Assembly: GCA_039096225.1 (NCBI GenBank)
Contig: JBBPEB010000002.1
Span: 992,001 to 1,056,000, forward strand
Length of the DNA stretch: 64,000 bases
From: Blastocystis sp. Blastoise
Taxonomy: Eukaryota > Protista > Bigyra: Opalinata
Reading direction: 5' to 3'
The position numbers were made by a program, and so were the translations under genes. Each line of letters starts with the position of its first letter. The stretch's first letter is position 1. The notes under the pieces are model-generated. The model ran no database searches. It saw only the letters and a program-made list of their open reading frames with translations, and was not told where the DNA came from. Below are positions 12,243 through 60,752 of this stretch, one piece after another.

Positions 12243-12286
<44 letters not shown>

Positions 12287-27246: not shown

Positions 27247-27300
27247 ATGTCTGAAGTTACTATTGAGATGCAGAATGGTGAAATAACAAGAGTTATCAAT
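27247..27300 (+). CDS. 5' fragment (18 codons, MSEVTIEMQNGEITRVIN) of the host gene interrupted by the transposon
   Basis: ATG at 27247. The last codon AAT (27298-27300) is the left target-site copy and joins in frame to GTA GAA AAT GGA ATG... at 60229. Confidence 0.85.
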
Positions 27301-27316
27301 CACTGGTAGGCATTTT
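27301..27316 (+). repeat. Left terminal inverted repeat of the outer element
   Basis: CACTGGTAGGCATTTT, preceded by the target-site copy AAT. Confidence 0.92.
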
Positions 27317-27415
27317 CACGGATATCAAAAAAACGACAAATTCGAAAAAGTAAGCAAAAAAATTTAAGACTTTTTCAGCCAGTTACACTTATAGATGCAA
27401 TATTATTATAATAAG

Positions 27416-27585
27416 ATAATTGGATAATTTCAAGCTTTTATCCACTACAATTGCATTAATTGTCCAATAGTTTTGATTGAAAAAATCTAGAAATTTCTTG
27501 TTAGTATCTTTATATATTATAATTGGATCATTTAAAAAATTTAACCACTAGAATTGCAATAATTGACCAATAATTTTGCTTGAAA
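27416..27585 (+). repeat. Subterminal degenerate direct repeat (103-bp spacing) containing CACTA
   Basis: CCACTACAATTGCATTAATTGTCCAATAGTTTTGATTGAAA (27442-27482) and CCACTAGAATTGCAATAATTGACCAATAATTTTGCTTGAAA (27545-27585) match at 36/41. Each is preceded by ATAATTGGAT. Confidence 0.75.
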
Positions 27586-27903
27586 CAACAAGATATTTAA
27601 TCATTATAATAGACTTTTAAACATTTTATATTTCGATTATAATAATAGAAATGTATTTATATTGTTTTTTTAATATTTTTTAAAAGTGTAAACAAAGCAA
27701 TTAGTTTAAATATGTATAAAAATAATTAATTAATATTATAACAAAAAAAAAATCAAATATAAAAAGAATAAATATTTGTTTTTATTATTTGTTTTGCAAT
27801 ATTATAATACCAATGACCTATAGAGTATAAATAATAGATAAAAATAATTATATAAATAAATACATAAGAATTAAAGAAAAATATTAATCTATATTTCGAC
27901 AGC

Positions 27904-28700
27904 CACTGTTATTCTGGTTTCATTTTTTTAAAGTATATGATTGGCTAGTTTCAGTTCAGAATTTGTTCAGCCACTAAAAACAGAGTAGTTTTAGAGACTT
28001 AGGTAAAAATCGTGAATTTTGACAAAATTTTGATACTTTTTTTCAGTTGACTTTTTATTAGACTATAAAATTCATGTTTAGCATATGTTATCAAAGAATT
28101 GACAATATTTTCTTGTTTTACAAGGTCACATAATATCCAAAACGTTTTTATTTTGTTTTAAGTCGCAATTACGACAAATAATGGGGTCAATATTTTAAAA
28201 CCTTTTGTTGCCCTGTTTAAAGTTTAGACCTTCTTAGAGTCACAAGTATGCGTAAAAAGGAATAAAAAGACCTCTATGGGTCAAAACCAAAATTCAGCCA
28301 AAAAGTCAAAAATTTATATTTTTTTTACACTGAAAAATTTAACCGAGCCTATTTGTATCATGGGCAGTTAGACCAGAGTTTTGAATTTTTAAAATATCTA
28401 CGGGAATATTTTTCTTGTTCAAAACTGAGTCTATTTATATTTTAATATATATCAGAGGACACAAGTGTTTTAGAAACGTTTTTTCTTTAGATTTTATTAT
28501 CACTAACATTTCCTCATCAAAAAAACTTATCAGAGGTTATAAAAAAACTAGTTTTTCACAGAATCAAAGAAAGTCCTTCTATTTGTTGTATTTTGAAATG
28601 ATTCTGTAATAAACAGGTATTTTAAGTTAGAAACAGTAGTTTTAAAACGTTTAAAAAAACAGATCAGAGAGTCAAAGAAAATGAGTAGTTTGTTTATAAG
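27904..28700 (+). repeat. Subterminal block of the inner element, an inverted homolog of about 59450-60225
   Basis: The core 28161-28470 aligns without gaps to the reverse complement of 59670-59979, with about 23 mismatches in 310 nt by manual count. Confidence 0.95.
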
Positions 28701-28884
28701 TTATGATTAGTGGGATTCAAGAGTATTTAATAATAGTGTAGTATGTGACTTGTCACAGGTTATAATACTATTAAAATATCTAAAAAAAACAAAAAAACAA
28801 TAAAACTGAATTTCTATGTAATTTTTCTTTTTTTGACTAATAAATTTGAATTTAAACGTGAATTCGCATTTATTTTTTATTTGA

Positions 28885-30010
28885 CGTCTGTATTTGGAAT
28901 TAGAGCTTATTAAAAGGTTTATGTATGTTTCTATGATAAGGACATGCTATTTCAGTATTTAATTATAAAATATTTTATATATTTTTTCGTAATTCTTTAA
29001 GATTTTGCATTCTGGATTCCCTCTTTCTACCTGGTAGTCTTTGTATTCTTTTTTAAGATGGTTTGTGATGTACACATGTTGACTTATTTCTTATGAGGTA
29101 TTTTTTTAGATTCATTTTTAATTCATTTAGGTTTTTGGTTACTCTTGTCTACCTTCTTTCAAACAACAACTCAAGCACTGTTGAAGGTATATAAATATAT
29201 TATATATATTTTTATTTTTTTGCATTAGTACTTTTCAATTTTTCTCTTTTCGTATATAAATATTATTTTTATTATTGTTTATTCTTATTCATTTTATGCT
29301 TCTTATTTTATATATTATTTAGAGTATTAATTTTTTTGTCTCAATTTATGAATCCAGTTGATCGTTATATTCTTTTAAAGAAAAATATAGGTTTATATAT
29401 TATTATTATTATTTATAACAATAATTATTATTATCTCTAGCCATTAAATGAATGTATAAAAAATGTATAAGAATCAGTGAATCATAATTATATAAGAAGA
29501 GGTTAGAAGAAGCTATGAAAAAGATTGAAGTGAACATACAACATAATGATTTAAAGAGTAAAGAAAGGGAATTAACTCAACAATTGAATTGTAATTATCC
29601 TACGATTATTTAACTATATAATAGTTATAATGTTCTTTCTATTATTATATCTGATACTGTATATTATTATTCTATTATATATTTACTATATTATATTGAA
29701 TTCTGTATTCTATTTTATGTAATGATTTTGTTTTATTATTCTATATTATCAACTTATAAGTAGCCATTTATTATTGACTCATATTTGTTTTCTTTATAAT
29801 AATAATAAAAGAATAAGAATGACTATATATATATAGGCACCTTTTTATTATTGGTACCTTATGTTTGTGCTATTATGAACATTATTACTGCAAATAATCA
29901 TGAATATGCTAAGAAGCAATGTGTTCTTGAAAGAAAAATTGTAAAAGAATCATTAGTGAATGAAACATTATTTATTTGTATAAAAGTTCATCATCCTCTT
30001 AAATATGTAT
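28885..30010 (+). pseudogene. Element leader exons followed by decayed captured coding fragments (inner cargo slot)
   Basis: 28890-29190 is homologous to the reverse complement of 58985-59250 (GGAATTAGAGC...GTTTATGTATGTTT...CAGTATTTA...CATTCTGGA.TCCCTCTT). Broken exons follow, such as EEAMKKIEVNIQQHNDLKSKERELTQQLN and VPYVCAIMNIITANNHEYAKKQCVLERKIVK. Confidence 0.55.
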
Positions 30011-32795
30011 ATATATATATATATAATTATTATTATTATAGAGAAGAATTTGATTATTTATATTTTTATTTTATTTTATTCTTATTATTATGTTATATAT
30101 ATATATATTTTTTTTATTTATTTATTTATTATTTTATATAAAGATAGAGAACAGATAATTCTTTATAATGTCAAAATTTCTATTTTAGAGATTAAAAAAA
30201 GGTATATAAATATTTATTACCTAATTATTCATATAATAGTTTGTTTGATAATTATTTAATGTTGAAAATTTTAGCATTTATATACTATGAGATATATTTT
30301 ATAGTATTTCTTCTTGTACTTCTTGATTAGAAAATATCATATAAAACTAGAATTACTAATCAGAATATATATTTTTGTATGTTTATGTCACTACATTTTA
30401 TGTAGACTATTTGAAAGCTAAATTAATTTCTTTGAAGCTTCTAATTGTAATATAATTCTTTTCAACGAACTTATTGGATAAATATATATTACATATTAAG
30501 ATTTGAATTAATGTATTACCATGTTCATTGTTATATATATTTTGGTTACTTTTATTCCTGTATTACTACTACCTCTTTTTCCATTAGACAAATCTATATT
30601 TGGAATTAATTTATCTTCTTCTGACATTTTTTTTGTCTCCTATATTCTATTCATATATCTATCTTCATATTCTTATATTCTTTTTAAATAAATAAAAGAA
30701 TTGAATTACTATAAAATTCAATTATACTCTTCCTTTGTTTAGAATTATCAATATATATTTTGAATTTTTTTCTTCATCTACTCATAATCCTTTAATTTTT
30801 ATATACTCATTTAAGTGCTTCTATAAATATATATACTGATTCTATTTAGTAAGAGTAGCCTTTCTACATTGATAACTCAATTCTACCTTCTAAACTATTT
30901 ACTTGTTACTATACATTTATCTTTCTGAAAAAATAAATATTATTTCTAAGAATTTAAAATCAGCATTTATGTCTCTTATTCTTTTTCTATTTATACGTTA
31001 GAAAACACATATTTTCATTTCAGTCTTTATATAAATATTTATTCATAATTAATATTTGATTTACAGAATTAGTCTATTATAATGTAAATATATTTTTGCT
31101 ACTATTTTTATTTTCTTAAATATCTCAATAATATTCAAGATGTCTATCCTAGATTCAAAATATATCCATTTTATTGTTATAATACTTCTTATGCTATTAG
31201 TCTTTCCGTTATTATAATGAATCCTACTGAACATTATCATAAAGATCTACATATACTTATTTATATTTTATATATAATGAAATAGATATTATCGAACTTA
31301 TTAATAATTCTATTATACTAATTTTTATGTAAAAAAAATACTAGGCTCATATTATTCATTTATTAATAGGAGTGCTTTAAAGCTACTTATCTTCCAAATA
31401 TTGAGTTATATAATAATAATATTGCTATTAATGATATTTATTCAAAAATTACTTTTGCTCTATTCCTGTATTTAGAATTAAATGTTATGAACTAAAATTT
31501 CATTATAATACTCTTACTATTCCTATTATATTAATTATGAAATAGAAATGATAATAGCTATAATGCAAATATTATATATATATACTATCTTTATTCCTCC
31601 TGTGACTACTACTCATATTCCTGATACTATTATACTTTTATCAAATTATGTTACATACAAATAATGGCTCAAAACTGAGTATTTTCTTGTTTTAATAGTA
31701 CTACTGATATTCATACTCCTTCTATATTATAGAATGTTACAATTACTCATATTAATGTATACTTATTATGTCTATGTTCATATTTTTTTAATGATATTGG
31801 TCATGATCACTCCAGGATATTATAAACATTTCATATTATTATTATTTTCCATTATTATTACTTTATGTCATTATTATAACCATATAAGTATCCTAGTTTT
31901 TATTCTACTGTTGTGGTGAATCTTGATTACATGAATCTTCATATTTCTATTATCTAACTATTGTTTATCCCCTGAGAGTATTGAATCAACTAATAACGAT
32001 TCACAAAAAAATAATGATATCAAAATTCTATTAATTTTATTAATTATCATATTATTATGTTCATCAATATAATTTCTTCCTTACCTAAACTTTTTATTAT
32101 TTATATTTCCCTTACATCTGAGTCAATGTAACATATATTCGAATTACAAATGTTACTACAAAATGGAGTATTCCATATTATTTAAAAGTTAATATATATA
32201 TAGATTATTAAAAACACATCCTTATATTTTTAATTAATGTAACCTAACAAAATTATACATATTTCTTCTTATTCATGTAATTATACATTTTCTACCAATA
32301 ATACTACTAGTAATAATGATAGTGATCCTCATTTTATTCATATTATTACTACATGTTTCCATTAATTACTATAATTATACTGTTTATAGTTTTCTTAATA
32401 TTCTTACTATCATGTAATTATTTATACTTTAATTTGTACATCACCATATATTGATTTCATTGATTAATGAAATTATCATATAATTTTAATACTATATGTA
32501 AATAATGATTCTATTTTTATAAATTCGAGAAACACTTATATTATATTACATATGTATCACCTAATAATTATATTAATAATTATATTATGTTGTATTAAAA
32601 TGATAAATCTCATGCTATTAATATATTGTTAAGCAACTTAATTCCATTTTACTACAATTTATTCTCATTCGATTACTTTTATTTCCAAATGCTAATTATT
32701 ATCTTCTTAAGTAATTCCTTTTTCTGCTTAAAACTCCTTATAATAAGTCTCTTTTATTATCTTCTTCTATTCTTATTGTTAAATAAGACTTTGAT

Positions 32796-32831
<36 letters not shown>

Positions 32832-34920
32832 CTCTTGTTGATCATGATATTATTAAGTTTTATTGATTACTTTTTTTTCGGAAAGTAGTTAACTTATAAG
32901 AAATATTCTATTTTGAATTTGATAAATGTAAGAATTTTTAATAAGAATTATTTAATTATTTTTAATTGAATATAAAATTGAAAACTAAATATGTTCAAGG
33001 AGAATATAAAGCATTCTTCGGCACAATCATTTATAAAAGAAGACAATTCCTTTATGTTTGAAGTTTTATATAATCTCTTTCATGGAATCATTATTAAAAA
33101 GTTTCTTTGTTTTCTAATTAGTTTTCATATCTTTAAATATCTATATATATATATATTTATAATGATTCTATTAATTACTATATGTGAGGATTATTTCATA
33201 CATTTAACTATGATTATAATTTATTTCTTTTTGAATATATAAATCAAAAATGGCATATGTTCTATTTCTTTCTATTTTTATTCTTAATTTCAAATGAATT
33301 ATATTATAAGAAAACAGTCATTAATCTTATCAATAAAATTAATCATTTTTTTATATATAGAAAATGTTAAACTATATCATTATCTGATTGAAATGAATAG
33401 ATAATAATAATAATAATAATTGTTGTTAAAGATACTGTTTAAAACGATATGATTCTCACACATTGAATATGGAAATTAGAAATTATATTTTGTAATAACA
33501 AATAGTATATAGAAGATATCATTTTCAACTTACTTAATATTTTTCATTTTGAACACATTACTTTATTTTAATTATAATAAAATTGTTTCATAATTCGAAA
33601 TATATATCATATATTATTAGTATTTATCAGAATATATTATGTAATCTCTTCTCGAATTCTATTATATAAAGATCTATTTTTGATACTGTTATCAATTTAG
33701 CGAAGTGAAAATAATTATTTAACCTATCATACTATTTCTTAGTATTATTTATCATAACTGGTATTACTAGGTGCACTTTATTCTGAATATAAATTAATTT
33801 ATTTGAAAGAAAATACTTTGCATTATTGAAACACTTCTTGATTATTTATAACTAATATATTTCTTTTCTTTTATTTGACCTTGAATTTAAATCTCAATCT
33901 TCTATTTATAATTGAATTATCAAGTTTCTAATTATGTAGTTAGTAATCAGAAATGGATATTCTTTCTATTTAGTTCTTCTTCTTTTTAGTGGTTTTATAT
34001 AACATTAATTTTTGTTTTAATTATTTAAATTTCTTTTTAGTATTCAATAAAGAATCAGAATTCTTATGTCATATTATTAAATTGACTAATGATACTTATA
34101 CTTAATACAGATATTTCGTATTATTATTTGGTTTATCATATCATCAGCCATTAATGTTCTACTTCATAGGAAATTTCTTTATTATTTAATACTATTCTGA
34201 TTTATTTTTCTTTTGTAAAGAATAACGTTAATTATTTATGATTAAAATTAATAGAATTTAATTATACTATACTTCCTATTATACTACTGTGACTCTTTAT
34301 TTTTACAGTTATGATTACTTATAAAAACAATTTGATCATTAATTATACATTCTCCATATTTATTATGTTCTGTTATGATCTTATTTATAGATAAAAAAAA
34401 GAAATGTATATCTTTTTCCTATTATTAGTTATATATATTATGCTTTTATTTTAATTCAATTTTTCGTTGAAATCTTATTCGAATCAATATGAATTATTTC
34501 TTTTAAGCCTTAAAGATAAAGATTTTTTGCAAATATCTTTAAATAAAAATATCTATAGTATATATTATTAAAATGAGAAATATCAATGTTTATCTATACA
34601 TAAATCTTCATTGATTCATATTACTATGATTATTGCATGTTATTGAATAGTTTGATATTATTACTATCAAACTAATTAGAATAGTTGAATTAAATAAAAT
34701 GGATACCAATTATCTAATTAAAAATAATATATTATGAAGAATATTGTATTTTAAAGTGTCTTAAAATGTCATTTATATATAACTTTAACTTCATACATAT
34801 TTTAAAATATAATTAAAAGATTATTATGAATATTATCTCCTAATGATAAACCATGATCTTTGTATCAAATCTTTTAGGATGTTATTTATATAAACAATAT
34901 GGAAATATATGAAAGATGAT

Positions 34921-35058
34921 AATATATATAAAAAATAAATAAGATAAATAAAAATATATGTATACCGTTATATCTTAATATACTAAATAATATATATAAA
35001 AAATAAATAAGATAAATAAATATATATGTATACCATTGTATCTTAATATATTAAATAC
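34921..35058. repeat. Tandem duplication of about 68 bp just 3' of the inner transposase
   Basis: Two near-identical copies of AATATATATAAAAAATAAATAAGATAAATAAA.ATATATGTATACC.TT.TATCTTAATATA.TAAAT. Confidence 0.8.
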
Positions 35059-35172
35059 TAATGAAAGAAGATAAGAATTAATAAGAATTAAATGAAATCC
35101 ATCATTTTTAATATAAATTAATAAATAAAATTAAATAAATAAAATAATAATTATATATAGGAAAATGTATTT

Positions 35173-38100
35173 TTAAGACCATAAAGATTTTAAGTATCGT
35201 GTAGTAAAAACAGTATTAGTTTGAATATCGCTTGAATTGTATGCTCTTCTATTTGAATTTTTAGAATGTATATCTTCCTATAATAATTTAATATAGAAAA
35301 ATATATATAATTATTATATACTTGATTATATTCTTCATCCTCATCTTCACCCTTCTTTTTTATATGTATATCTGAAATAATAATATTATCAGGAATAATC
35401 TTATTGATTATTAAGAATGGAGATCCATATTTAGATTCTATTGGAACAGAATCATTTGAATTATTTATTATATAATATAATCTGCTAACTGATGGTTGTG
35501 AAACAGGGTATTCATGTTTTCTTATAAATACTATATCATTTATTTGAATATAATATAATGACTTTATTAGATGAATTGTATTCACATTTGATATATCTGT
35601 TACATTATATGCAATATAGGAGTTATCTATTGACTCTATTCCTTCGTCTTCCTCTGTACTTGTAAACACTAATGATTCATTGATAAGAATTTCGGAATAA
35701 TAAAAAATGGATAATAATTTCAAGTTTTCTTTTAGTTTATTATAAGATGAATTATGATCTAGTAAATCTATATTATTTGTGAGCAAATCCATATTAATAT
35801 CTTTAAATAATAGTTGATTTATGGTAGTATCATTAAGTAAAATCAATTCTTTTATAAGATAATATATTTCTTGTTCATTAAGATCTTTCTCCTCTGACTC
35901 TCTTAAACCCTTTACAGAATGAATAAAGTTATTCTCAGCATATCTAATTGTTTTAAATTGTTTATGGGATTGATATTCATTATCATGAATGATATTAGTT
36001 TCAACATTATTCTCTAAATCAGCTAACATAGGTGAAGAAATATTTCCATTATTTATATTAGAAAAATCATTAATAAAACAAGCTTCTTCTTGTATAAGTT
36101 TTTTTATACTTGATTCATTAAAACATCTTCTTCCAAATGTTATCCGTTTTATTTTGGAGTAAAAACGTTCTGATTCATATGTACAGCCATATGAATATGA
36201 CCCTACTGATTGTATAGAATCTGCTAAATGAAGAAGTAGATGTATTTGTGAATTGATAATCTCTCGAGGCAATAAAACTTCACATAAGAAATTAAAAAGA
36301 TAACATTGTTTTCGTAGTATTTCTATATTGTTATTAAACATAAATAATTTATCATATTCAACTTCTCTAATTATTGTAGCTAAAGGATCGATAAGGAGAA
36401 TAATTGAAGAATCTTCTATATTGAAATCATGAGTAATAAGAGGTAATATAACTGAAAAGAAGAATATTCTTGTATGCGAAGAAACACATGATATTTTCTT
36501 TTTATTCATGATTAATCTAAACTCATATTCATATTTGTTATATAAAGTATTAAGATTGATTATTCTTGTATTCAAAATATTCATGTTTTCTTTAGACAAA
36601 CAATATTTATTAACTACTTCAACTCCTTCAGTATTACTATCTTTTGAAACTAGTGAAGAGTAATGCTCAGAGTTAAAACCAAATAATAAGGATAGAAATA
36701 GAGTTACAATATTATTAAACAGGTGCATTGTATCAATGCTGAAACTAGCTGAAATATCAAATAAGGGAATACTTTCAAATGGGCAACATTTCTTTTTGAC
36801 ACCCATATATGATTCGTTCTCTTCACATAGACTTCTTTGAGTTCTTATAGTATCCATTGTCCTTTGATTATATTGCTTCATTTCAAACGCATCATTATAT
36901 ATATATTCCAGTGGTATTGATTTAATTATTCTTGGTAGAAGACAAGATGTATCTTCTATATAATATGTATATATAGTAACATTTACTATTATATAAAAAT
37001 GTATAAAAATGAAAAAAAAATAGATATAAATATAGAAGAAACTAATACTAGAAATATATATAAAAATGTTTTTAGTATGGATCATGAATATTAATGAAAT
37101 ATGAATATAAATAATTATAATATCAATAATGGTATACTATACTAACTATTTACAATATAGAGGCGATATAAAAAAAAATTATATGAATAGTAATAACTAT
37201 AAGATATTGAACTACATATGATATTAATACAGATACTAAGGATAATAGTAGTACTAATAACAATATCAGTATAAAGAAGAATAAAGAATGATATATATAC
37301 TATTATGGATAATCAATGGAATATTGAAATAATGATAAAAATAATATAATATAAACATAATAATATATGTTTATAAAAAGTATACTAATATAATTAGAAT
37401 ATATATATATATATATATACCTGGATTCTTGATAATTATTGGAAATCTTATTTCATTAATTTGATTATTATCATTACTTTTGTCAATAAGATTAGATACA
37501 CTTCCAAATGAGCATTTAATTCCTTCATGAAAATGTTCGTCTGTTCTTCCTATTTCTAATTCGCAACATCTACATGGGAAAATAGAAGATGGTCCACTGA
37601 AACAACCGATTGCCGTCATAGCGGCATAGTCTCCATATACATTTAATAATATGCCAACAACCTTTCTTTTTTGTATAGTGTTGTTTATCATTATATCCAT
37701 TTCTATCCCCTTTGAAAGTTGTTTAAACTCTTCAACTATTATTGACATTATAGGCCAACTATGATACTCTGAAGTAATTGCATAAGTCCAAAAAGATCTC
37801 TTATCATAATTTCTTTTAATATTATAGTTTAATAGCTTTATTAATAGAGGAAAGGAGGATCTATTATAATCTGAAGAAGAATGCGAAAATACTGATATCC
37901 CATCACAAGTAAAACTAAAGGCTAAGAGAATATCGCCATTTTCTAGTAATCTTTCAATATACTTCTTATATGTAATACTTCTTAAAAAAAGAGGAATATC
38001 ATCTGGAATACTATTTTGATCTGAATTAATTATTGATAATATATCTTCTTTTTTATAAAAAGAAATATCTTGGATCATTGTTTTTGATTTTAGCATTTGT

Positions 38101-38619
38101 CTTATCCTTGGTATTATAGGTACAATTGTTATTCTTCTACCTAAATAAACAATAATGCATATCTTATATATTAAAAATATAATATTATTGTCATACTTGA
38201 TTTCACCTCACAAATACTATTTGAACAAGTCCTTTTTTCTATCTCTATTGATTCTTTACCTTTATTATATCCAAGAATAGTATTACAACAATCTGATACA
38301 TATATGTTAAGAGTAGAAACTTTATTAGGTACTAATCTTATTAATTTTTGTACTACCTGTTGACCATAAAGAGGAATATCAAATTTATTTATTGATGGAT
38401 TTATTATTTCAATTATATCATTTACAAATTTATATATATTCTTAATTTTTTCCATACTAATTCTTAATGAAATCCAAAATTCAAATATAATCTTCTCTAT
38501 CTTCTCATTTACTCCATTAGAACCATGATTCTCATTTGATATCTATATATATGTATCTATATATATGTATCTATATATATATATCTATATATATATATAT
38601 GTATCTATATATATATATC

Positions 38620-38690
<71 letters not shown>

Positions 38691-42338: not shown

Positions 42339-42350
42339 AGACTAATAGTG
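42339..42350 (-). repeat. Terminal inverted repeat of the inner element
   Basis: AGACTAATAGTG followed by AGT. The preceding TCGCTTTTTTCCTCCCGTGAAAA resembles the reverse complement of the outer left end, TCGTTTTTTTGATATCCGTGAAAA. Confidence 0.75.
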
Positions 42351-42521
42351 AGTACAAATTGCAATTTTTGATTTATCTATAAAAATAAAAAATAGAATAT
42401 TATATAAAAATAAAACATACAATTCATTGTTCTTTATTATAATTAATTATATTTGATCTATATAAATATATAATGATAATGTTAATATATATATATATAT
42501 ACTATTATTGACAATGATTTA

Positions 42522-49934: not shown

Positions 49935-52900
49935 TTATAATACTCTCATTGATATTAAATATAGATGGACTATCCCATAAGCATATATAGTATTAGATAT
50001 AAGATATATCAGTAGTAATAGTGATAGTAGTAACATAAGTAGTAGCAGTGTAGAGATAAATTCATTCGTCTTATTCATCACTTGAGTTTCTTCTATACTT
50101 ATATTTGTTGACTCTTTATTAATTTCATTATTATTAGTATAAATAGTATAAATAGTATTTTCTTCCACTTTTACTTCTTCCTCCTTTTTATCAGAAGCTT
50201 CTATTTCGTTATTATTATTATTATCATTTTCATCTTTATTATCATTTATATTATCTTTATCATTTATATTATCTTTATCATCTTCTTTTTCTTTTATATC
50301 CATTTTTTCTTCTTGACTAACATTATCTTTTTCTGATAAATTATTATTATCTATATTTATATTATTATTATTATAAAAAGAAAATGATAAAAAAGGTGTA
50401 GATAAATCATTATAAGAAAATTGTTTTGTACATATAGATGGATCTGGCAACATAGTTATATTAGGATTTGTTAATGATTCTATTAATTTATGTTTTAAAT
50501 CTTCTAAATCATTTTGATTACCAATATGTTGTTTTTGAAGATAATGTAAATGAACTAATGGTGTAGATATTAATAATAAATGAAATTTTGAAAATGGTTC
50601 TTTTGGATCAAAATAAATAGGAAATATATTATAAATAGCCCAAAGAAAAGAAGAAGCAGATATAGTATCACTATACAAAGAAATAAGATCATAATTATAA
50701 TAATCTGAAAGAGAAGTAATTAAATCAGAATCAACTAGAGGATAAGGAGTATTAATATAAGATTTTACATCAATATGAGGTAAATTATTACATATTTCTG
50801 GTATATTCATTATAGTAGAAGGAGAAGGTCCTGAAGTAAAATGAATTGAACTATATGCTAATTTAGATGCTATATAACGTTGAGCTCGAAAATACAATTG
50901 TTGAGCTAAATATTTATTTTTAAACGTAGATATTCTTTCTTGTATTTTTTCATCAATTATAGATTGAGGTACAGATAATGAAGTTATATATAATAGTATA
51001 GAATTTGCCTATAGAATAATATATTATTATTATATTTATTATATTTATTATATTTATTATATTTATTATATTTATTATTTAAAATAATAATAAAATATAA
51101 TTATCAATAGAATAATATTATAAAATAATTATTTAAAACAATAAATAATAATATTAATATTATATATATATATACCTTTAAAATAATTTGAGCCATTTCA
51201 TAAACACGACTATTTAATAAATTTTTAATAAATTCATCTTTTGATTTAAAATTATTTTCTTTTTCTAATACCATACTTCTATATCCTTGTATACTTTTAA
51301 TACATGTTCTTAATGTACTATCCATATCTTTTGTATCATTATCAGGTATAGTAAATGACACAGGTTGTTGATATATATAAGGTGATAATGGATAAGGTGA
51401 AGTAGTAGGTGATGTATATAGAGTAGTAGATATAGGTTGAGATATAGTTGGTGAATTATGATTTGCTAATATAGAAAGATATGGAGAATTTATTGGTTGA
51501 TCAAATAGATTTGTGGATATCATTGAAGTTTTTGAATTTAATGATATTCCATTCATAGTATTATTAGTATTACTATTAGTATCATTCATATTATTATTAG
51601 TATTAACATTACTATTATCAATATTAGTATTATTATTATTAGCATCAGTATTATAATTACTATTATTACTAATATCAGTATTACTAATAATAGTATTCAT
51701 TGGATAAGAAGAAGAAAGAGATGGTGTTGATAGAATAGATGTATTAGAATAAATATTATTTGTATTCATATTATTGTTATTTCTATTTATTATAGAATTT
51801 TGTATATAATTTGATGACACATTTATATTATTCATTGTATTCATATTGATATCTATAGTATTATTAGTATTAATCATATTAGTATTAATATTATTACTAT
51901 TATTATTATGTAAACAATTTTTACATATATAATTTTTATTATCAAAATTCTAATTTAAACATATCTTCAGAAGATAATTCAGTACATGATTTATGAACCC
52001 ATCTTTCACATTTTTCACATAAATACATATTTTGATCATTTTCATTCCATTCTTTATTACATATAGGACATATTTTAAATAATGGCTCATTTAAAGCACA
52101 ATTAGTACAATAATTACGTTTAATTGAATAAGAAAACGGTAGATTTTGTTGATGACATTGATTACAATGATAACATGTATAACAATACCATGTATCTTTA
52201 GGTAATTGTAATAATGGTGGATTTAAACATTTCATATGATATGTTTTCTTACAATAATCACAACTAATAATATCTTGATCTTCTAATAATATATTATTAT
52301 TATTAGTATTATTAGCATTATTAGTATTATTTATAGAATGATTAGAAGGTGAAGATAAAGGTGTTGAAGAAGAAGATTGTAATGATGATGATTTATAATG
52401 ATTTGATATTGATTTATTCATTTCTGAAGGATATATATGTATATTATTATTATTCACATTATTATTATTATTATTCACATTATGATTATTATCATTCATA
52501 TCTTCAATATTATGATTATTATTAATATTAGGTATAGTATTATTACTTTGTGTATGAATATTTAATCCACAATGTTCACAAATACAACAATATTTACATC
52601 TCCAAGTTGTTCTTAATAAATCATTAATAACAATACGGGGTACTAAACAATTAGCATGATAACATTCACCACAATCAATACAAAATAACATTTTATCTAT
52701 ATCACCTGTACTACCACATATTATACACATATCTCTACATAATATACTTTTATATTTATCTTGTATACTTACTTTAGTTATATCTAATGGTTCTATATAA
52801 GGTAATAATGTTTTAGGTGCTAATTTTCCTATTTCATCTTTTACTTTTTCTAATTGATGTTGACGTTCACTAGCTATATGTGAATTTGTTTGTGCAGTTA

Positions 52901-54716
52901 AAGATGCTGATGGACCATTTATTTGTTCTAAACGTTTATTTTGGATATTTATTATTTCTTTTTCATATATACCAGAAGTAATATTATGACATAATTGTAT
53001 AAATATTTGTTTTCCTTCTTTATAAAAATCATCAGTTGCATTCCAAATATTATCTTCAGGATTATTATATTTATAACTATTTAAACATATTAATTCAAAA
53101 TCATTATAAAATAATTGTATAGATGCATATTCTTTTTGTTTTATCTTTTCATTCATTATATCTAAACACATAGCATTTGATTTTGATATTACTTTATAAT
53201 AATCAGGTGCAAAATTCTCTTCAACTTGTTTTGTAAATAAATGTTTTATATCAATTCTTAATAATTCTTTATGTAAATCTATCATTTTCTTTCTTCTACA
53301 ACGACTACATAAATAATTATCATAAAAACTCTTTGAAGTTGTTATACTATTTTCTTTTTTACTATTACCAGTTCTTATAGATAAAGTATCATTTCCATCT
53401 TTATCTTCTATTTCTCTTTCTCCTTCTATTTCTCCTTCTATTATAGTATCTTCTTCTTCTTGCTGATGATGATGTCTATTTTCACGTTCTTTATTCATAT
53501 ATCTTCTTACACATTTACTTTCACATGATTCATGTATATACATACCACATTCTTGGCATAATAACATATCTTTTGTATTTATATATGTTTTACGACATAT
53601 ACTACAATAATGATTCGTATTATATAATAATAAACATTTATCACAACATATTATTTGCTTTTCATTTATTACTATATAATTCCATATATTATGTTTTGTT
53701 ATATATAAATTACATCCATTACAAACTCTACAACAAAAACAATAATATTTATGTTTTTCTTCATTATAATTATGTTTTGAATCAGGATCACATTCTAAAT
53801 GTATATATAAATTACATTTTGAACATTGTAATAATGGATTTGTTAATGTTGATATATTTGATAAACAACATATACAATAAGTAGAATCTTGAGGTAATAT
53901 TTTTATTAATTCTTGTGAATGATATTGAGTTAATGGAGAAGATGATGTTAATTAACTATATATATATAGTATATTGATAAATAATATAAAAAATTTAAAT
54001 CATATATATATAATGAGAACTAATTATATGAATAATAAAATAGTTTTAAAAAATAAATAAATATAAATTATAATCAAATAATAAAGAAAAATATTATTAA
54101 AAATATATATAATAAACTTAATATAATAAATAAATATCATAATATATATACTTATAAATAGTTTTCCATCGAATAACATCTCTATCATTTAATAAATACC
54201 AACCACTTTTTATTTCTTCTTTATAAAACTTGACATAATGTTTACCTGTATTTGCATTAAAGCACGTGAGATAACCTTTTTCCCAATCTCCAAATGGATA
54301 TTTATTTATATAAATATATATATAAATAGATGTATATAACCATTCTTTATTACTTCTGATTAATTTTTCAGATATACTACTAAATGGTTCTTGACTTTTC
54401 TGAATAATTTTAGGTACTAATTCTAATTCTTCATTTATATGTTCTGTATTTTCTACAGATAATGTATAATAAACAGATAAATGTTCACGTTTTGAAGTAA
54501 ATATAGTAACATTATTTATAGGAATTTGACATAATTTATTATCAATTAAATCATATATCTGTATAATATTCTGTTTATCAATATTTGTCATACTTTCATC
54601 TTTATTATATGTTCTTATTATTTGACCAATATGCCATATTTCTTTATAAGGAGTATTATTAGGAATATTCTCTATATTAGTAGTAGTAGTAGTAGTTGTT
54701 GTAATAATCATATCAC

Positions 54717-54750
<34 letters not shown>

Positions 54751-57700
54751 ATTATTATTAATATTATTATTATCAGCAATAACATTACTATTATTATTAT
54801 TATTAATAACATTATTATTATCAACAATAACATTACTATTATTATCAATAATATCATTATTATTATTAATATTACTATTATTACTATTTGAAACACTACA
54901 AACATTAGATTCCATGGAAACATGAGTAGTTGATAGAGAAGGCGATATAATCGCGGGAATAATGCTTTCTTGAGTAGATGTAGTGATTGAATCTTTGGTA
55001 TTAAATATATCTATATCTTTATTATTATCATAATCATTATTCTTATTCATATCATTATCATTCATATTAGAATTACAATGAATTTCATTATTTTTATTAA
55101 TTTCATCATATATACCAGAATCATGAATCGAGTCATCAAGTATTTTGTCATGAATATCAATATTTTCATTATTATTATCATTATTTCCTTTTTTATTTTC
55201 ATTATTATTATTTAAAATGCCTTCAATTGTTTTAAACCATACAATTCCACCATAAACATTACATTCTCTTCTTTCTAAACACATCCAATAACCTTCACCA
55301 TCTTCAAATAATACATAATATAATAATAAATCTTGTAAATAATATAATATACGTCCTCTTAATGATGTTTCTTGTATTGTATCATATATATTCATAGAAC
55401 AACCTATTAAATCTTTTCCTAATAATAATATTTCTCCATCTTGTACTAAACTATGTTGAATCATATCTTGAGTATATATATAAGAATATATAGAAGAATC
55501 TGATAATATTGATGATGTATATATAGTATTTGTATTTATAGGCATAGTTATAGTATCGGAAATTATATTTATATTATTATTAGTAGTAGAATTATTATTA
55601 TTATTATTTATATCTGATACTTTTGTATTATTAATAGATTCCATAGAAATAGCAGTAGGAGTTGAAATAGATCGAATAGAATCTGTAGAAACAGATATAT
55701 CTTTATTTATTGATAAATTTATATTATTATTATTATTAGTTGTATTATTATTATTAGAAACAGAAGGAATAGATGTATTTATATTCATATTACTATTATT
55801 ATTATTATTAGTTGTATTATTCGTGGCAATTGTTGAATTCGGACTATATATACTTCCTTTTCTTGATATAAATACATTAGTCTCTTTTTGATTCTCCAAC
55901 GATATAGAAATATTCAAATCATTTTTAAGATCTTTTGTATCTAATTCGTGTTTATCTGGGGTACGACAAGGAGATAACGTGATTAAGGGGGATTTTGGAG
56001 CACAAACACGTGATATATATGTAGGCAATACAGGCTTAATAGACACTTGTGTAGAAGTAGTAGTAGTAGTAGTATTATTATTATTATTTGATATTATATC
56101 TATTGATGAAAGATTATTATTATCAGATAAATCTTTATTATTATTAGAAAAATCTTTATTATTATCAGATAAATCTTTATTATTATTATCAGATAAATCT
56201 TTATTATTATCAGATAAATCTTTATTGTTATTATTAGTTTCTACAGGAAGAGTATGTTTTTCAGAATTAGAATCCAATTCAGTTTGTTTCTCAATTTTAT
56301 TATTATCATTATTAATATTATCATTATTATTATTAGAATTAGATGTCTCTTCATGAATATCAATATCTACAGAATCTATACCATTCACTAAATTATGATT
56401 ATTAGATAAATCTTTATTATTATGATTATCTATGGACATTGAATGTATTAATTCTGATAAATTAGGTGATCTATTATTATTATTATTATTCTCTATATCA
56501 TCATGTATATAAATAGAGTTTTTATTATATTTCTTAAGAATATATCGACAAACAGGACATAACCATGTTTTCATATTAGTAGCTGTTACACATCCCTCAC
56601 CATTCTTCCAATGATATAAAGATACTAAAGGTGATTGAGAAGACATAATATAATGATTTATACATCCATAATGATAAGTCATAGTACAACGAGTACAAGT
56701 AATAATAAGATGATCTTGATCTATAGAAGGAGATGAAGAAGGAGAAGAAAAAGAATTCGACAAAGATTCTTTTGAATTCTTTATAGAATTCTTTATAGAA
56801 TTCTTCATTGAATTCTTCATTGAATTCTTTACAGAATTCTTTACTGAATTCTTTACTGAATTCTTTACTGAATTCTTTACTGAGTTTTGATCTTCTTCAT
56901 CTGTTGTAATATTCATATCTATATCTATATCTATATCTATATCTGTTTCTTCTTCATGATTATGATTTGATTTATATAATTCTTTTTCATTTTGATCTTT
57001 ATATTTATATTCTTTTAAACATAATGCACATTCTTCTATATATGTATTATTTAATATACATGTTCTTGGAGGTGGATTAATATAAGGTAATTGTTTTCGT
57101 TCTTCTTTTTCTATATCCATTTCAGATTCATGATCATTCTTTGTATCATTTAATATACCTGATTTATCAATAAATTTATCATTAGGAATATGTTTAGAAG
57201 CATTAGTATTATTATTATTATTATTACTAGTAGTAGTAGTAGATTTATCATTAGCATGATTATTTGATGAATTATTTCCACGGGAATTTGTTGATACTGT
57301 ATCTGTTGGTGAGTTTTGATTATTATTATTTGAATTATTATTATTATTATTCTTATTATTACCATTAGTATTATTATTATTAGTTTCATTTGATAAATCC
57401 ATAGAATGATATTCTTCAAATAATCGTGAATTTTTATGAGTAGATCCTTCTAAATCTAATAATGTTTTACCATCTATAGAAGATAATGGTTTATTAATAT
57501 GAATAGAATTATTCTTTATAGAATTATTTATAGTAGAACTCTTTATACTATCTTCTTTAGATTTACTTACAGAAGAATAATCACTTTTAATACTTGATTT
57601 TCTCTTTAAAGATTCTTTAGAAATACTATTCCTTCTGTGTTTCACATAATCATCAGAACTATCATCATCATTATTACGACGTTTATTCTTTTTTAATTTC

Positions 57701-58600
57701 ATATTTATACCTTTACGTTTATATTTATCTAAATCATTTCCATCTATATTATAAGTAGGATCATAATTATGACGTGAAATAGAATGATAATTTTCTTTTT
57801 TATCATTTTTATCATTATCAATTTCAAATGTTTCATCATTTTCATTTTCACTTTGATTATCACTATCATCATAATGATAGAATGAACCTCTTCCTCTTCC
57901 TCTTCCTCTACCTCTTCCTCTTCCATGTGATCGTAATTTACCACGACCACGGCCACGGCCACGAATAATAGGATTTGATACTCTATCGGTATCTGTTATT
58001 ATACTTGTAGTATCATCATCATTATCATTATCTTCTTTTTCTTCTTCTTCTTCTCTTTCTTTTATTTCTTCTTCTTCTTCATCATCATCTTCTTCTTTTC
58101 TTTCTTCTTTTGTGTCTTTTTCTTTATGTTTTTCTTCTTTTTGTTCTTTTTGCTTTTTTTCTTCTTGTATACTATCTTCTTTTCTTTCTTTTTCCTCTTC
58201 TTGTATAGTATTTATATTTGAATAATCAATACTATGATTTCTATTATTCATATAACTCATATCATTTATACTATCTTTAGAAGAATCACGAATAGTATTA
58301 CCTTTAACAGAAGAATTATTCTTATTATTTGATATATCTTTTGAATTATTTATATTTTTATCTTGAGATGAAGAAGATGAAGAATTAGAAATATTTGATT
58401 CTTTACGATGTTTATTTGAATGTATATTATTATTATTTATAGAAATAGAATTATCTTTAAGAGAGAGATTCGATTCATCTGTTTCTTTATTATTTTTATC
58501 TTTATTCATATTACTTATATTTGATCTATTTATATCAATCTTATTTATCTTCTTAGAGTTTATATGTTGATTATTTAGTCTAGAACTATCTCTTTTAGAT
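49935..58600 (-). CDS. Captured trithorax/KMT2C(MLL3)-like chromatin reader: multiple PHD fingers, bromodomain and Tudor/PWWP-like segments; no SET domain; one frameshift
   Basis: The PHD trio CIICGSTG...CIDCGECYHANC...WRCKYCCICEHC, CDYCKKTYHMKCLNPPL..LPKDTWYC and CPICNKEW...CEKCERWVHKSC resembles KMT2C PHD4-6. A bromodomain is present (LFTKQVEENFAPDYYKVI...MCL..MNEKI...Y...FYNDFELICLNSYKYN). Further PHD fingers lie at 53300-53890 and 56540-57040. Approximate exons: 58600-54160, 53955-51177 and 51008-49935. Confidence 0.85.
56110..56230 (-). repeat. Coding tandem repeat (N)NNKDLSD, about 5 copies
   Basis: Repeats of ATCAGATAAATCTTTATTATT on the + strand. Confidence 0.85.
56765..56885 (-). 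repeat. Coding 12-bp tandem repeat KNS[V/M/I], about 9 copies, inside a split PHD finger
   Basis: GAATTCTTTACT, GAATTCTTCATT and GAATTCTTTATA units; peptide NSVKNSVKNSVKNSVKNSVKNSMKNSMKNSIKNSIK. Confidence 0.9.
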
Positions 58601-58693
58601 CTATATATAAAATATTTTTAGAAAATAAAAAAATTATTAATAATTATAGGGTAATTTATTAATTTTTTTAAGAATACCCGTAATAAATAATCA

Positions 58694-58745
<52 letters not shown>

Positions 58746-58776
58746 TAATATATAATAATAATAATATTAATAATAA
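58694..58776. repeat. (TAA)n microsatellite in the intron joining the leader exons to the cargo
   Basis: An imperfect AAT run. Confidence 0.85.
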
Positions 58777-58791
58777 TTTCTATCTATATAC

Positions 58792-59260
58792 CGTTTAATC
58801 TTTAACAGGACTTAACTAACAATTTGATGTATGAATAGACAACAAAACCTATCATTCTATATAATATAAATTATAATTAATATAAATTGTATACAATTTA
58901 AAATAAGCCAATATTAAAAACATATTTATATTTAGTAATTGAAAAAAAAAGTAATGAATAGAAAAACAAATAATACATTTATATACTTTTTATAGCATGG
59001 CAAGTTGTTTCTTGAAAGCGTTGGAATAAGAACAAGGAAATAATCTTGTTAAACAAAAGTAGCAGCAACTCTATTGATTAAATTTTTAAGGTTGACCAAG
59101 GAGACAGTCTGATACGAAGAGGGACTCCAGAATGGAAAACCTAAAAGAATTATGAAAATAAATATAAAATATTTAATAAATAAATACTGACACAATACAT
59201 TCTTGTCTTCTAAACATACATAAACACTGTGAGAGGCTCTAATTCCTCTTAGAGACAATA
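58792..59260 (-). other. Element-derived spliced leader exons (non-coding or degenerate) upstream of the cargo
   Basis: GT-AG-bounded segments homologous to 28885-29390. The last exon (58848-58792) has stops in all three frames. Confidence 0.5.
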
Positions 59261-59449
59261 AAATAAAAATAATTATAAATTCACTAATAAATTCAAATGT
59301 TCAAGTGAAATACAAAATTTTTCATGAAAATACCTTTCTTTAATTTTTTTAATTTTTTATGACTCGCTATCATATTTATAAGTTATGACACGTTTCACAC
59401 TACACCATCTATACAATACTACTGCATCCCACACTTTTAACCTTTAAAA

Positions 59450-60225
59450 AATAACTCATTTTTGTTGACTCTCTGATCTGTTGACTAACTCGTCCAAAAA
59501 CTATTAATTATAACTTAAAACGTCCATTCGTTGATGAATTAACTCTAAAAATGACTTAAAAAAGACTTTTAGTTGATTCTGAAAAAAAACTCTTTATTTA
59601 TAAGCTTTGACATACTATTTGTATGCGGAACTTAATGTCATGATAGAATAAAATGAAAAACCTTTTTTAAAACACTTGTGTCCTCTGATATTCAATAAAA
59701 TATAAATAGACTCAGTTTTGAACGAGAAAAATATTCCCGTAAATATTTTAAAAATTGAAAACTCTGGTCTGATTGCCCATGGAACAAATAGGCTCGGCTC
59801 AATTTTTCACTGTAAAAAAAATATAAATTTTTGACTTTTTGGCTGAATTTTGGTTTTGACCCATAGAGGTCTTTTTATTCACTTTTACACATACTTGTGA
59901 CTTTCAGAGGGTCTAAACTTTAAACAGAGCAACAAGAGGTTTTAAAATATTGACCCCATTATTTGTCGGAATTACGACTTAAAACAAAAGAAAAGCGTTT
60001 TTGATATTGTGCGACCCTCTGTAAACAAAAATTAATGTCAATTCTTTGTTAAAATATGTCAAATAGGGTCTTTGAGTCTAAATCAAAAGTCGACTTAAAA
60101 TTTTTATGAAAATTTTATTTTTTTTGCCTAAGTCTTTTTTTTATTCAAATTTTATTGGCTGAATAAGTTTTGAACGAAAATTAGCCAATCAAAAACCTTC
60201 AAAAACTCAAAAGTGCCTACCAGTG
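59450..60225 (-). repeat. Right subterminal block and right terminal inverted repeat (60210-60225) of the outer element
   Basis: An inverted homolog of 27904-28700. It ends AAAGTGCCTACCAGTG and is followed by the target-site copy AAT. Confidence 0.95.
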
Positions 60226-60752
60226 AATGTAGAAAATGGAATGCGTGAAGTGATCATTCCTTATTCCATTAGATATGAAGATTCATTTAAATTGAATAAG
60301 CATAAACTTGGAAAAGGTAGTATTATTGATTTTGCAAATGAGATTGCTAAAATGAAGCCTCTATTGATGTTTGCTTGTTCTCAATTTGATCCAAATTTTA
60401 AATTACACTTTTTAAAACGAAAGAATGAAAAGAAAAGTGATACAGTCTTTAAAGTATATATATTTCAATCTCGCTATTTTATTATAATATATTTATTATT
60501 TTGTTTATTATATTATATATTATTATATTTATTATTTTGTTTATTATTATAGTTATTATTATTATATTAATTATTGTTTTATTAATAGACTAAAGATAAA
60601 GAAATAGAAAAAAGAATAAAGCACGTATGTAAAACTAATGGACCAACAAAAAAAGGCATCGAAGACACGTGTACTTATGTAAAGACGAATTTTAAAGCCC
60701 TAAGTAAAGGTATTAAACAAAGAGCAGAATCATTCTTTTTAAAAGACAAGTA

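What the first reader, a model, noticed from the sequence alone, without database searches (positions are those of the whole stretch)
27298..60228. A 33-kb cargo-carrying CACTA-type transposon with exact ends
Seen in the sequence: AAT|CACTGGTAGGCATTTT at the left end and AAAGTGCCTACCAGTG|AAT at the right end, 32,925 bp apart. They enclose two transposases, two accessory genes and a large chromatin gene. Established: CACT(A/G) termini, short terminal inverted repeats, a 3-bp target-site duplication and a TnpD-type DDE transposase define CACTA/EnSpm elements, and gene-fragment capture is known mainly from smaller non-autonomous Pack-CACTAs in plants. Inferred: this is an autonomous giant element that moved as one unit with kilobases of host cargo in a protist. 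I know of no described family like it, but I cannot search to confirm that.
Basis: partly seen in the sequence, partly recalled or inferred. Interest (0 to 1): 0.95.

Follow-up and report, generated by a model that had tools for sequence, protein, structure and literature searches.

The report
Two nested giant CACTA transposons
The 33-kb stretch is not one giant transposon but two large, recently active CACTA/EnSpm-type DNA transposons of a tortoise-gut Blastocystis, one inserted inside the other; the outer one always carries a PHD/bromodomain gene, and large EnSpm elements with extra genes are already known.

Summary
The ends are real. AAT|CACTGGTAGGCATTTT lies at 27298-27316 and AAAGTGCCTACCAGTG|AAT at 60210-60228, a 15/16 inverted repeat with an AAT duplication, and the flanks join into one open reading frame. 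The window is Blastocystis sp. 'Blastoise' (GCA_039096225.1, contig JBBPEB010000002.1).

The 32.9 kb is a nest of two elements:
- **Outer element:** 18.5 kb, 27301-27903 plus 42351-60225.
- **Inner element:** 14.4 kb, 27904-42350, a related element in opposite orientation. It has its own ends (CACTGTTATTCTGG / CACTATTAGTC), its own transposase and a near-perfect 3-bp duplication (AGC/AGT).

Sister copies of the outer element (L001: no substitutions in 16.5 kb; L002: 95-98%) lack the inner element and show its empty site. The inner element has its own second copy (L004, 99.8-99.9%).

Related elements of 11-16 kb end at the same CACT termini with different flanks. Duplications are perfect in 3 of 6 pairs (AAT, TTG, ATA). 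One splits an 811+808-codon reading frame exactly in frame.

A profile-profile comparison places the transposases in the Tnp2/Transposase_21 + DUF4218 (CACTA TnpD) family (99.7%, E 1.4e-25).

The PHD/bromodomain gene is in all three outer copies and looks constrained. No host parent was found.

Verdict: a new member of a known kind, giant EnSpm with accessory genes.

The parts
27247..27300 (+). Left half of the interrupted host reading frame. The ATG is at 27247 and the last codon, AAT (27298-27300), is the left copy of the target-site duplication.
   Evidence: 19 open codons end exactly at 27300, in the same frame as the right flank.
27301..27316 (+). Outer element, terminal inverted repeat at the transposase-proximal (L) end: CACTGGTAGGCATTTT.
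   Evidence: The same terminus is found in L001, L002, L005 and L010, each with a different flank.
27301..27903 (+). Outer element, first 603 bp of the L subterminal region. The nested insertion cuts it off from the rest.
   Evidence: 100% identical to L001 4617-5218, where it runs straight on into the sequence matching window 42351 onward.
27904..42350 (-). Inner nested CACTA/EnSpm element, 14,447 bp, in opposite orientation to the outer element. Its ends are CACTGTTATTCTGG (27904, R-type) and CACTATTAGTCTTTTTTCACGG (42350, reverse strand, L-type). The flanking triplets are AGC (27901-27903) and AGT (42351-42353).
   Evidence: it is absent from L001 and L002, whose empty site reads ..GACAGTACAAA.. 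in L001; a second copy in L004 (99.8-99.9%) starts exactly at the 42350 terminus with a different flank; the end types are homologous to those of the outer element.
28120..28442 (+). Conserved non-coding block in the R-type end module of the inner element.
35173..38920 (-). Transposase A of the inner element (P0006, 972 aa, with introns). The long reading frames are 35190-37085 and 37371-38096. Motifs CDGISVF, PCRCC, MHLFNN and ESERF are present.
40690..41010 (+). Inner element's homologue of the small gene that lies between the L end and the transposase.
   Evidence: tblastx gives 46% identity over 107 aa to window 42989-43309 on the minus strand.
42351..44416 (+). Outer element, remainder of the L region. 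It holds a small annotated gene (42522-43183, minus strand, 104 aa, no known domain).
44417..48262 (+). Transposase B of the outer element (P0001 model, 1011 aa; main exon 45717-48125). The DDE candidates are D260 (45954-45956), D351 (46227-46229) and E696 (47262-47264).
49935..58509 (-). Large chromatin-reader-like gene of the outer element. The annotated models have 1836 to 2378 aa, and a short upstream exon may lie around 58600-58900. The bromodomain and PHD fingers are at 51942-53567, with a further PHD-like finger at about 56550-56720. The first ~373 aa (58509-57391) form an acidic, RG-repeat 'leader' shared with other elements.
58510..60225 (-). Outer element R-end module. The conserved non-coding block is at 59698-60020.
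   Evidence: 96% identical to the L005 R end, 94% to L002, and 77-81% to the inner element's R-type end.
60210..60225 (-). Outer element R terminal inverted repeat, reading CACTGGTAGGCACTTT on the minus strand.
60226..60552 (+). Right copy of the AAT duplication (60226-60228), followed by the right half of the interrupted host reading frame.
   Evidence: 107 open codons from 60229, in frame with the left half.

Best explanation
Window 27301-60225 holds two autonomous-looking CACTA/EnSpm (CMC superfamily) DNA transposons of Blastocystis sp. 'Blastoise', one nested in the other.

The outer element is 18.5 kb without the nest. Its layout is: L repeat, small gene, transposase B, a PHD/bromodomain gene on the other strand, a 1.7-kb R module, R repeat. 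It inserted at an AAT, 18 codons into a host reading frame, and duplicated those 3 bp.

The inner element is 14.4 kb. It has the same layout but lacks the big gene, carries transposase A and has different terminal sequences. It sits at an AGT, 603 bp inside the outer element's L end, in opposite orientation.

Shown here: the ends, the duplications, the empty sites, the sister copies and the transposase family.

Inferred:
- Each DDE transposase binds its own CACT termini, cuts the element out and reinserts it across a 3-bp staggered cut.
- Copy number rises through repair or replication timing.
- The outer element could now carry the inner one along as a passenger.
- The PHD/bromodomain protein is an element-maintained accessory factor that reads histone marks, for target choice or to counter silencing.
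For: **Ends and frame:**

**Nesting:**
- L001 (another contig) matches window 27300-27902 at 100% and then jumps to 42351-44036 and 44033-58260. There are no substitutions, only three 1-base indels, in 16.5 kb.
- L002, a third copy at 95-98%, also runs straight across the site.
- The inner element has CACT ends, triplets AGC/AGT around a single AGT in the empty sites, and a second copy in L004 that starts exactly at its terminus.

**Mobility of the family:**
- Homology stops exactly at CACT in 10 aligned ends with unrelated flanks.
- Complete pairs have these triplets: window AAT/AAT, L005 TTG/TTG, L010 ATA/ATA, L009 TTT/ATT, inner AGC/AGT, L002 AAT/ATA.
- By my calculation from base composition, a perfect triplet has about 0.04 probability by chance, so 3 or more perfect out of 6 has about 1e-3.
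- The L005 element splits an 811-codon and an 808-codon open frame that join in phase once the element and one TTG are removed.
- The left flank of L001 has a paralogous empty site at window 15131|15132.

**Transposase:**
- Direct Pfam hits to DUF4218 are below threshold but consistent across paralogues.
- A profile search finds distant relatives that carry Transposase_21 and DUF4218, one of them named 'transposase family Tnp2' from Rhizoctonia solani.
- hhalign of the two alignments gives 99.7% probability, E 1.4e-25, over 510 columns. Blocks IPLIPR, (S/T)xDG, GDxxAI, PCRxC, DxMHLFxN, IHxLxHL and ER(F/Y) align.
- The main transposase exon has no stop codon in seven loci. dN/dS is 0.13-0.37.

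**Big gene:** it lies inside the repeats in all three outer copies. Window versus L002 shows 17.75 synonymous against 12.25 non-synonymous differences over the four exons compared, giving per-exon dN/dS of 0.07-0.22 where defined.
Against: - Three of six duplications are imperfect: L002 AAT/ATA, L009 TTT/ATT, inner AGC/AGT.
- The right end of the L001 copy lies about 2 kb beyond the DNA I could fetch, so its duplication is unseen.
- No Pfam transposase model passes its threshold directly on these proteins. Family membership rests on profile-profile and transitive homology.
- No clear array of subterminal repeats was found.
- The order of events is not resolved: nesting may have come before or after arrival at this site.
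- The dN/dS values rest on few substitutions.
- The function of the PHD/bromodomain protein is inference only.
- I could not inspect reads, so assembly contiguity is taken from the published long-read assembly.
Confidence: 0.9

Rival explanations
1. The whole 33 kb moved to this site as one unit, because the nesting happened in a progenitor copy and the composite then transposed using the outer ends.
For: The outer ends have a perfect AAT duplication and intact repeats. Nothing in the data dates the nesting relative to the arrival here. The outer copy and L001 have no substitutions between them, so all the events are very recent.
Against: No second composite copy was seen. Both other outer copies lack the inner element and show a clean empty site. 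Even if this view is true, the 33 kb is still two elements, not a single family.
Confidence: 0.12
2. This is a composite or macro-transposition. Two separate elements bracket ordinary host DNA, including the chromatin gene, and mobilised it between them.
For: The long inverted repeat 28077-28694 / 59446-60063 (81%) looks at first like two inverted copies at the ends.
Against: That repeat is the R-type module of the inner element facing the R module of the outer one. The outer element has one L-type and one R-type end, like a single element. The interior, with transposase B and the big gene, is collinear in three copies at unrelated loci.
Confidence: 0.02
3. The similarity between loci comes from segmental duplication or an assembly artefact, not from transposition.
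For: The near-identity of L001 and the window could in principle be an assembly duplication.
Against: The copies lie on different contigs and have different flanks that begin exactly at CACT. Each carries its own private nested insertion. Target-site duplications and in-frame empty sites are present.
Confidence: 0.02

Closest known systems
Giant EnSpm/CACTA elements with accessory genes (Chondrus crispus, 16-20 kb with 4-5 reading frames; Ectocarpus, over 10 kb and up to 15.2 kb, often with nested insertions), as cited in PMC6431247 and PMC12477816
   Same: The superfamily is the same, the size range is 11-18.5 kb, there are extra reading frames besides the transposase, and nested insertions occur. 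One of these hosts, Ectocarpus, is also a stramenopile.
   Different: The host is an anaerobic gut protist with about 21-23% GC. The accessory gene here is a multi-PHD plus bromodomain protein. I did not compare sequences with those families because no reference sequences were on hand.
Plant En/Spm (CACTA) elements encoding TnpD and TnpA
   Same: Both have CACT(A/G) termini, short terminal inverted repeats, a 3-bp duplication and a TnpD-type transposase with Transposase_21 and DUF4218 blocks.
   Different: No TnpA homologue and no clear array of subterminal repeats were found. The transposase is very divergent, with direct Pfam hits below threshold. The second gene lies on the opposite strand and is a chromatin-reader-like protein.
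Fungal CMC elements with CACTG ends (Cryptococcus CNIRT6/CNEST, PMC12810828) and fungal Tnp2 transposases (Rhizoctonia solani EUC57887.1)
   Same: They share the CACTG terminal motif, a Tnp2-family transposase and recent mobility into genes.
   Different: Only remote protein similarity was seen (E about 1e-4 in the profile search). The element sizes and gene contents differ.
Pack-CACTA (gene-fragment-carrying non-autonomous CACTA elements of plants)
   Same: In both, extra coding sequence lies between CACTA ends.
   Different: The elements here encode their own transposase. The extra gene is long, intact, conserved between copies and has no identified host parent.

Membership tests
CACTA/EnSpm (CMC superfamily) | Termini begin with 5'-CACT(A/G) | tested here: met
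   All ends begin CACTG or CACTA: outer, inner, L002, L004, L005, L007, L009, L010.
CACTA/EnSpm (CMC superfamily) | Short terminal inverted repeats (about 10-30 bp) | tested here: met
   The outer element has 15 of 16 matches. The same T/C asymmetry is seen in L002, L005 and L010. The inner element has 10 of 14.
CACTA/EnSpm (CMC superfamily) | 3-bp target-site duplication | tested here: met
   Three of six pairs are perfect (AAT, TTG, ATA), two have one mismatch and one is poor. The empty sites show a single copy of the triplet.
CACTA/EnSpm (CMC superfamily) | TnpD-type DDE transposase (Pfam Transposase_21 / Tnp2, with DUF4218) | tested here: met
   hhalign of the family alignment A2 against A4 (proteins with Transposase_21 and DUF4218) gives 99.7% probability and E 1.4e-25. 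Direct Pfam finds only DUF4218, below threshold at 19-22 bits against a cut-off of 27.
CACTA/EnSpm (CMC superfamily) | Subterminal arrays of short repeats (TnpA-binding type) | tested here: inconclusive
   No 10-mer recurs more than twice in the end regions. The L end has one imperfect repeat of about 45 bp. The R end instead has a conserved block of about 320 bp.
CACTA/EnSpm (CMC superfamily) | Placement inside CACTA rather than Mirage or Chapaev in a transposase phylogeny | not tested
   No reference transposase sequences were available through the tools.
Pack-CACTA | Non-autonomous, with no transposase gene | tested here: not met
   Both elements encode uninterrupted transposase reading frames.
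Pack-CACTA | Carries fragments of identifiable host genes | tested here: inconclusive
   No host parent of the PHD/bromodomain gene was found, but those searches were limited by length window and word sharing. The L007 relative fuses the shared leader to 2,238 unrelated residues.
Giant EnSpm with accessory genes | Longer than 10 kb, with several reading frames besides the transposase, between EnSpm ends | tested here: met
   Six elements measure 11.0 to 18.5 kb. The outer element holds the transposase, a small gene and the large gene.
KDZ (Kyakuja/Dileera/Zisupton) giant transposons | KDZ transposase core, long terminal inverted repeats, 4-8 bp duplications (features as listed in PMC12810828) | tested here: not met
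   The transposase aligns to Tnp2/Transposase_21 proteins, the repeats are 16 bp and the duplication is 3 bp.

The most novel reading that the evidence does not exclude
The R-end module together with the first ~373 residues of the big gene may act as a portable expression 'leader' that different element lineages share and fuse to different coding cargo. In the outer family the cargo is PHD/bromodomain, in L005 there is almost none, and in L007 it is an unrelated 2,238-residue sequence. On this reading the PHD/bromodomain protein is a transposon-encoded histone-mark reader that steers integration or blunts silencing. Such an accessory function has, to my knowledge, not been described for CACTA elements.
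Probability: 0.15. Interest if true: 0.6.

Novelty: new member of a known kind. Interest (0 to 1): 0.35.

Why it matters
The genome paper for these tortoise Blastocystis isolates reports only bulk transposable-element percentages (PMC10690189). This work defines a concrete, very recently active family of DNA transposons in that genome.
- Exact ends and target-site duplications are now known.
- At least two insertions break coding exons.
- Several elements are nested in one another.

The family is useful for annotation, because gene models here run into element ends or are split by them. It may also serve for strain typing or as a genetic tool in Blastocystis.

The constant PHD/bromodomain gene offers a testable case of a transposon carrying its own chromatin reader. 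It does not change what is known about how CACTA elements work or how large they can be.

Tried and rejected
- **Alternative genetic code or ciliate-style eliminated sequence:** rejected. The long reading frames use the standard code, and the organism is Blastocystis.
- **Rfam scan of 27000-60500:** no family matched.
- **Conserved R-end block as a gene or structured RNA:** no codon periodicity, no shared reading frame and no covariation.
- **Subterminal repeat search:** nothing convincing.
- **Pfam on the small genes, flanking reading frames, the L007 big reading frame and the unassigned parts of the big gene:** no significant hits beyond the PHD fingers and bromodomain.
- **AlphaFold2 on residues 990-1463 of the big reading frame (window:54121-55542:-), single sequence:** mean pLDDT 31.8, unusable, so no fold search was run.
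- **Look-up of the 350-aa right-flank reading frame (61206-62255) to see the host gene annotation:** not on record.
- **Metagenome scans for the R terminus and for the conserved block:** 0 hits each.
- **Right end of the L001 copy and left end of the L004 copy:** Reaching them needs the exact spliced products of multi-exon genes, and I did not hand a joined spliced model to any tool. Exons were searched separately by reference.
- **L012 (P0021 locus):** only an R-type terminus was found (CACTATGAGG, 18570) and no partner.
- **Third terminus-like site at 63322-63337:** no homology beyond about 18 bp.
Full report
**Observation**

The stated ends are in the sequence.
- AAT (27298-27300) is followed by CACTGGTAGGCATTTT (27301-27316).
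- AAAGTGCCTACCAGTG (60210-60225) is followed by AAT (60226-60228).
- The two ends match at 15 of 16 positions, and the first 12 bases are exact.

The exact 12-mer occurs nowhere else in the window. Allowing up to 2 mismatches gives 3 hits against 0.42 expected from shuffles. In DNA of about 20% GC I expect about 1e-4 exact hits by chance.

The flanks also fit an insertion. The left flank is open from an ATG at 27247 through the AAT. The right flank continues in the same frame for 107 codons. So something was inserted 18 codons into a reading frame.

**Source**

The 787-aa reading frame at 45834-48197 is identical to a protein of Blastocystis sp. 'Blastoise', GCA_039096225.1. Locus L003 shows that the window is contig JBBPEB010000002.1. 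The genome paper (PMC10690189) describes these tortoise isolates as long-read assemblies with 21-23% GC and reports only bulk transposable-element percentages. The sequence uses the standard genetic code.

**The 33 kb is two elements**

*Sister copies of the outer element lack the inner segment.*
- Locus L001, on another contig, matches window 27300-27902 at 100%. It then continues directly with 42351-44036 and 44033-58260. There are no substitutions and only three 1-base indels in 16.5 kb.
- At the junction L001 reads ..TTTCGACAG|TACAAATTG... The window reads ..TTTCGACAGC|CACTGTTATT.....CTAATAGTG|AGTACAAATTG...
- A third copy, L002 (95-98% identical), also runs straight across this site.

*The inner segment is an element in its own right.*
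- Segment 27904-42350 (14,447 bp) has CACT ends and sits at a single AGT. The flanking copies read AGC and AGT.
- It has its own second copy elsewhere. L004 is 99.8-99.9% identical and begins exactly at the 42350 terminus with an unrelated flank.

*The long inverted repeat is explained.* An alignment of ten ends shows two end types.
- The L type, next to the transposase, has ...TTTTCACGG..AAAAAACGACA.
- The R type has ...GATTGGCT..TTCAGCCA and is followed by a 1.5-kb module.

Each element has one end of each type. The inner element lies inverted inside the L region of the outer one. That accounts for the 618-bp, 81% inverted repeat seen. It is the inner R module facing the outer R module.

**The elements are mobile units with 3-bp duplications**

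In all ten aligned ends, homology starts exactly at CACT and the flanks are unrelated. Complete pairs are listed below.

| Element | Size | Flanking triplets |
|---|---|---|
| Window outer | 18.5 kb without the nest | AAT/AAT |
| L005 6849-20993 | 14.1 kb | TTG/TTG |
| L010 4510-18377 | 13.9 kb | ATA/ATA |
| L009 7764-18731 | 11.0 kb | TTT/ATT |
| Window inner | 14.4 kb | AGC/AGT |
| L002 9147-25280 | 16.1 kb | AAT/ATA |

With A and T near 0.4 each, a perfect triplet match has about 0.04 probability by chance. Three or more perfect out of six then has about 1e-3 (my calculation).

Two further observations support insertion at defined sites.
- The L005 element separates an 811-codon and an 808-codon open frame of a gene with He_PIG domain hits. 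The two frames join in phase when the element and one TTG are removed.
- The left flank of L001 has a paralogous empty site in the window at 15131|15132.

**Transposases**

*Family assignment.*
- Direct Pfam scans give only DUF4218 below threshold, at the same place in several paralogues.
- A profile built from seven paralogues (A2) finds 61 proteins among 1.84 billion cluster representatives. The close ones I looked up are all from this same genome.
- The distant ones carry Transposase_21 (Tnp2) and DUF4218. One is annotated 'transposase family Tnp2' from Rhizoctonia solani.
- hhalign of A2 against an alignment of those distant proteins (A4) gives 99.7% probability and E 1.4e-25 over 510 columns. 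The characteristic blocks line up.

*Catalytic residues and integrity.*
- The likely catalytic residues in P0001 are D260, D351 and E696, at window 45954, 46227 and 47262.
- Transposase A (35173-38920, minus strand; P0006) is about 45% identical to transposase B.
- The main transposase exon has no stop codon in seven loci.

**The large gene**

Pfam finds a bromodomain and several PHD fingers, and a weaker PHD-like finger further upstream. The gene lies inside the repeats in all three outer copies.

Window versus L002 shows 17.75 synonymous and 12.25 non-synonymous differences over the four exons compared. Per-exon dN/dS is 0.07-0.22 where defined. The numbers are small, but they fit constraint.

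Two searches found no host paralogue. The nearest outside proteins are Phytophthora MLL-like methyltransferases at about 25% identity over the PHD/bromodomain region. Those searches were limited by length window and by low-complexity words. 'Host cargo' is therefore unproven. On present evidence this is an element gene of unknown origin.

The first ~373 residues of the gene and the R module are 94-98% identical in several elements whose transposases are only 49-56% identical. In L005 the gene stops at 513 aa. In L007 the same leader runs in frame into 2,238 unrelated residues. This points to exchange of modules between lineages, or to capture behind a common leader.

**Other features**

A non-coding block of about 320 bp lies 200-530 bp inside every R-type end. 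It is 85-95% conserved even where the transposases are only 36% identical. It shows no coding signal, no covariation and no Rfam hit. No clear array of subterminal repeats was found.

**Mechanism**

Shown here: the ends, the duplications, the empty sites, the near-identical copies and the transposase family.

Inferred from what is known of CACTA/EnSpm elements:
- The DDE transposase binds the termini, excises the element and integrates it across a 3-bp staggered cut.
- The two elements, with different terminal sequences and transposases about 45% identical, are probably moved by their own enzymes.
- If the outer element moves again, it would carry the inner one along.

Whether the nesting came before or after arrival at this site cannot be told from these data.

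**Comparison with known elements**

Large EnSpm elements with extra reading frames are already described.
- Chondrus crispus has EnSpm families of 16-20 kb with 4-5 reading frames (cited in PMC6431247).
- The stramenopile Ectocarpus has giant EnSpm elements, often with nested insertions (PMC12477816).
- CACTG-ended CMC elements are mobile in Cryptococcus (PMC12810828).

This is therefore a new, well-defined and recently active family of a known kind. Its distinctive feature is the PHD/bromodomain gene.

**Limits**
- I could not inspect reads or scan the whole genome for termini.
- I could not reach the right end of L001 or the left end of L004.
- I could not search other isolates for the empty host site.
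- I did not hand a joined spliced gene model to any tool. Exons were searched separately by reference. Reading-frame continuity across the insertion sites was checked by arithmetic on the coordinates only.
- No contig looked human, and nothing here touches a toxin or a virus.

Noticed in passing
L004 3565-7611 and 13902-18357: The sister copy of the inner element carries two private insertions of about 4.0 and 4.5 kb from one further repeat family, about 90% alike. Both start ...AATTTAGTTCATGTAGCGTAC and end in a GC-rich hairpin followed by ...GAAACGCTTG. One is flanked by an 11-bp duplication, TATATATTTAT. A partial copy lies at L006 7500-8164. The element type was not determined.
   Followed up: partly
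L001 6904-9616: The L001 copy of the outer element has a private 2.7-kb insertion absent from the window at 44033-44036. It has no long reading frame, has internal repeats and has a GC-rich start (GGTCACGCCGCAGGTCCGGGGCC). Copies at 88-96% identity occur in L006, L007, L009 and L011, so it is a common non-autonomous repeat.
   Followed up: partly
window 12070-15131 and 24830-25227: Another repeat family or gene family lies here. It is 94% identical to L001 2172-4616 and 77% to L002 26465-26874. Those loci have annotated genes of about 840-850 aa with no Pfam hit. CACTA elements lie in or near it in three loci.
   Followed up: partly
window 63322-63337 (minus strand): A terminus-like sequence, CACTATTAGGCACTTT, is flanked by AAT. 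It matches the element's left terminal repeat (CACTGGTAGGCATTTT) at 13 of 16 positions and the right end (CACTGGTAGGCACTTT) at 14 of 16. There is no further homology and no partner. It may be chance or an old remnant.
   Followed up: partly
L007 15165-22742 (minus strand): This is a 2,525-aa open frame. Its first 287 residues are 96% identical to the leader of the window's big gene. The rest is unrelated, has no Pfam hit and contains a motif that looks like an AAA ATPase (GYWLILD...HPSFRILF). A second element end (CACTGTTATTCTGG, at 9160) abuts the same locus near a contig end.
   Followed up: partly
L005 2754-6892 and 20931-23424: The annotated gene models on either side of the L005 element run 43 and 62 bp into the element ends. 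These are two halves of one gene with He_PIG domain hits that the insertion has split. Gene annotation around these elements should be treated with care.
   Followed up: yes
L006 1-5776; L012 16992-18092: Other mobile-element genes lie next to CACTA transposase paralogues. One is a Helitron-type Rep/Pif1 helicase gene (1862 aa). The other is a Phage_integrase-type tyrosine recombinase gene (366 aa), possibly Crypton-like.
   Followed up: no
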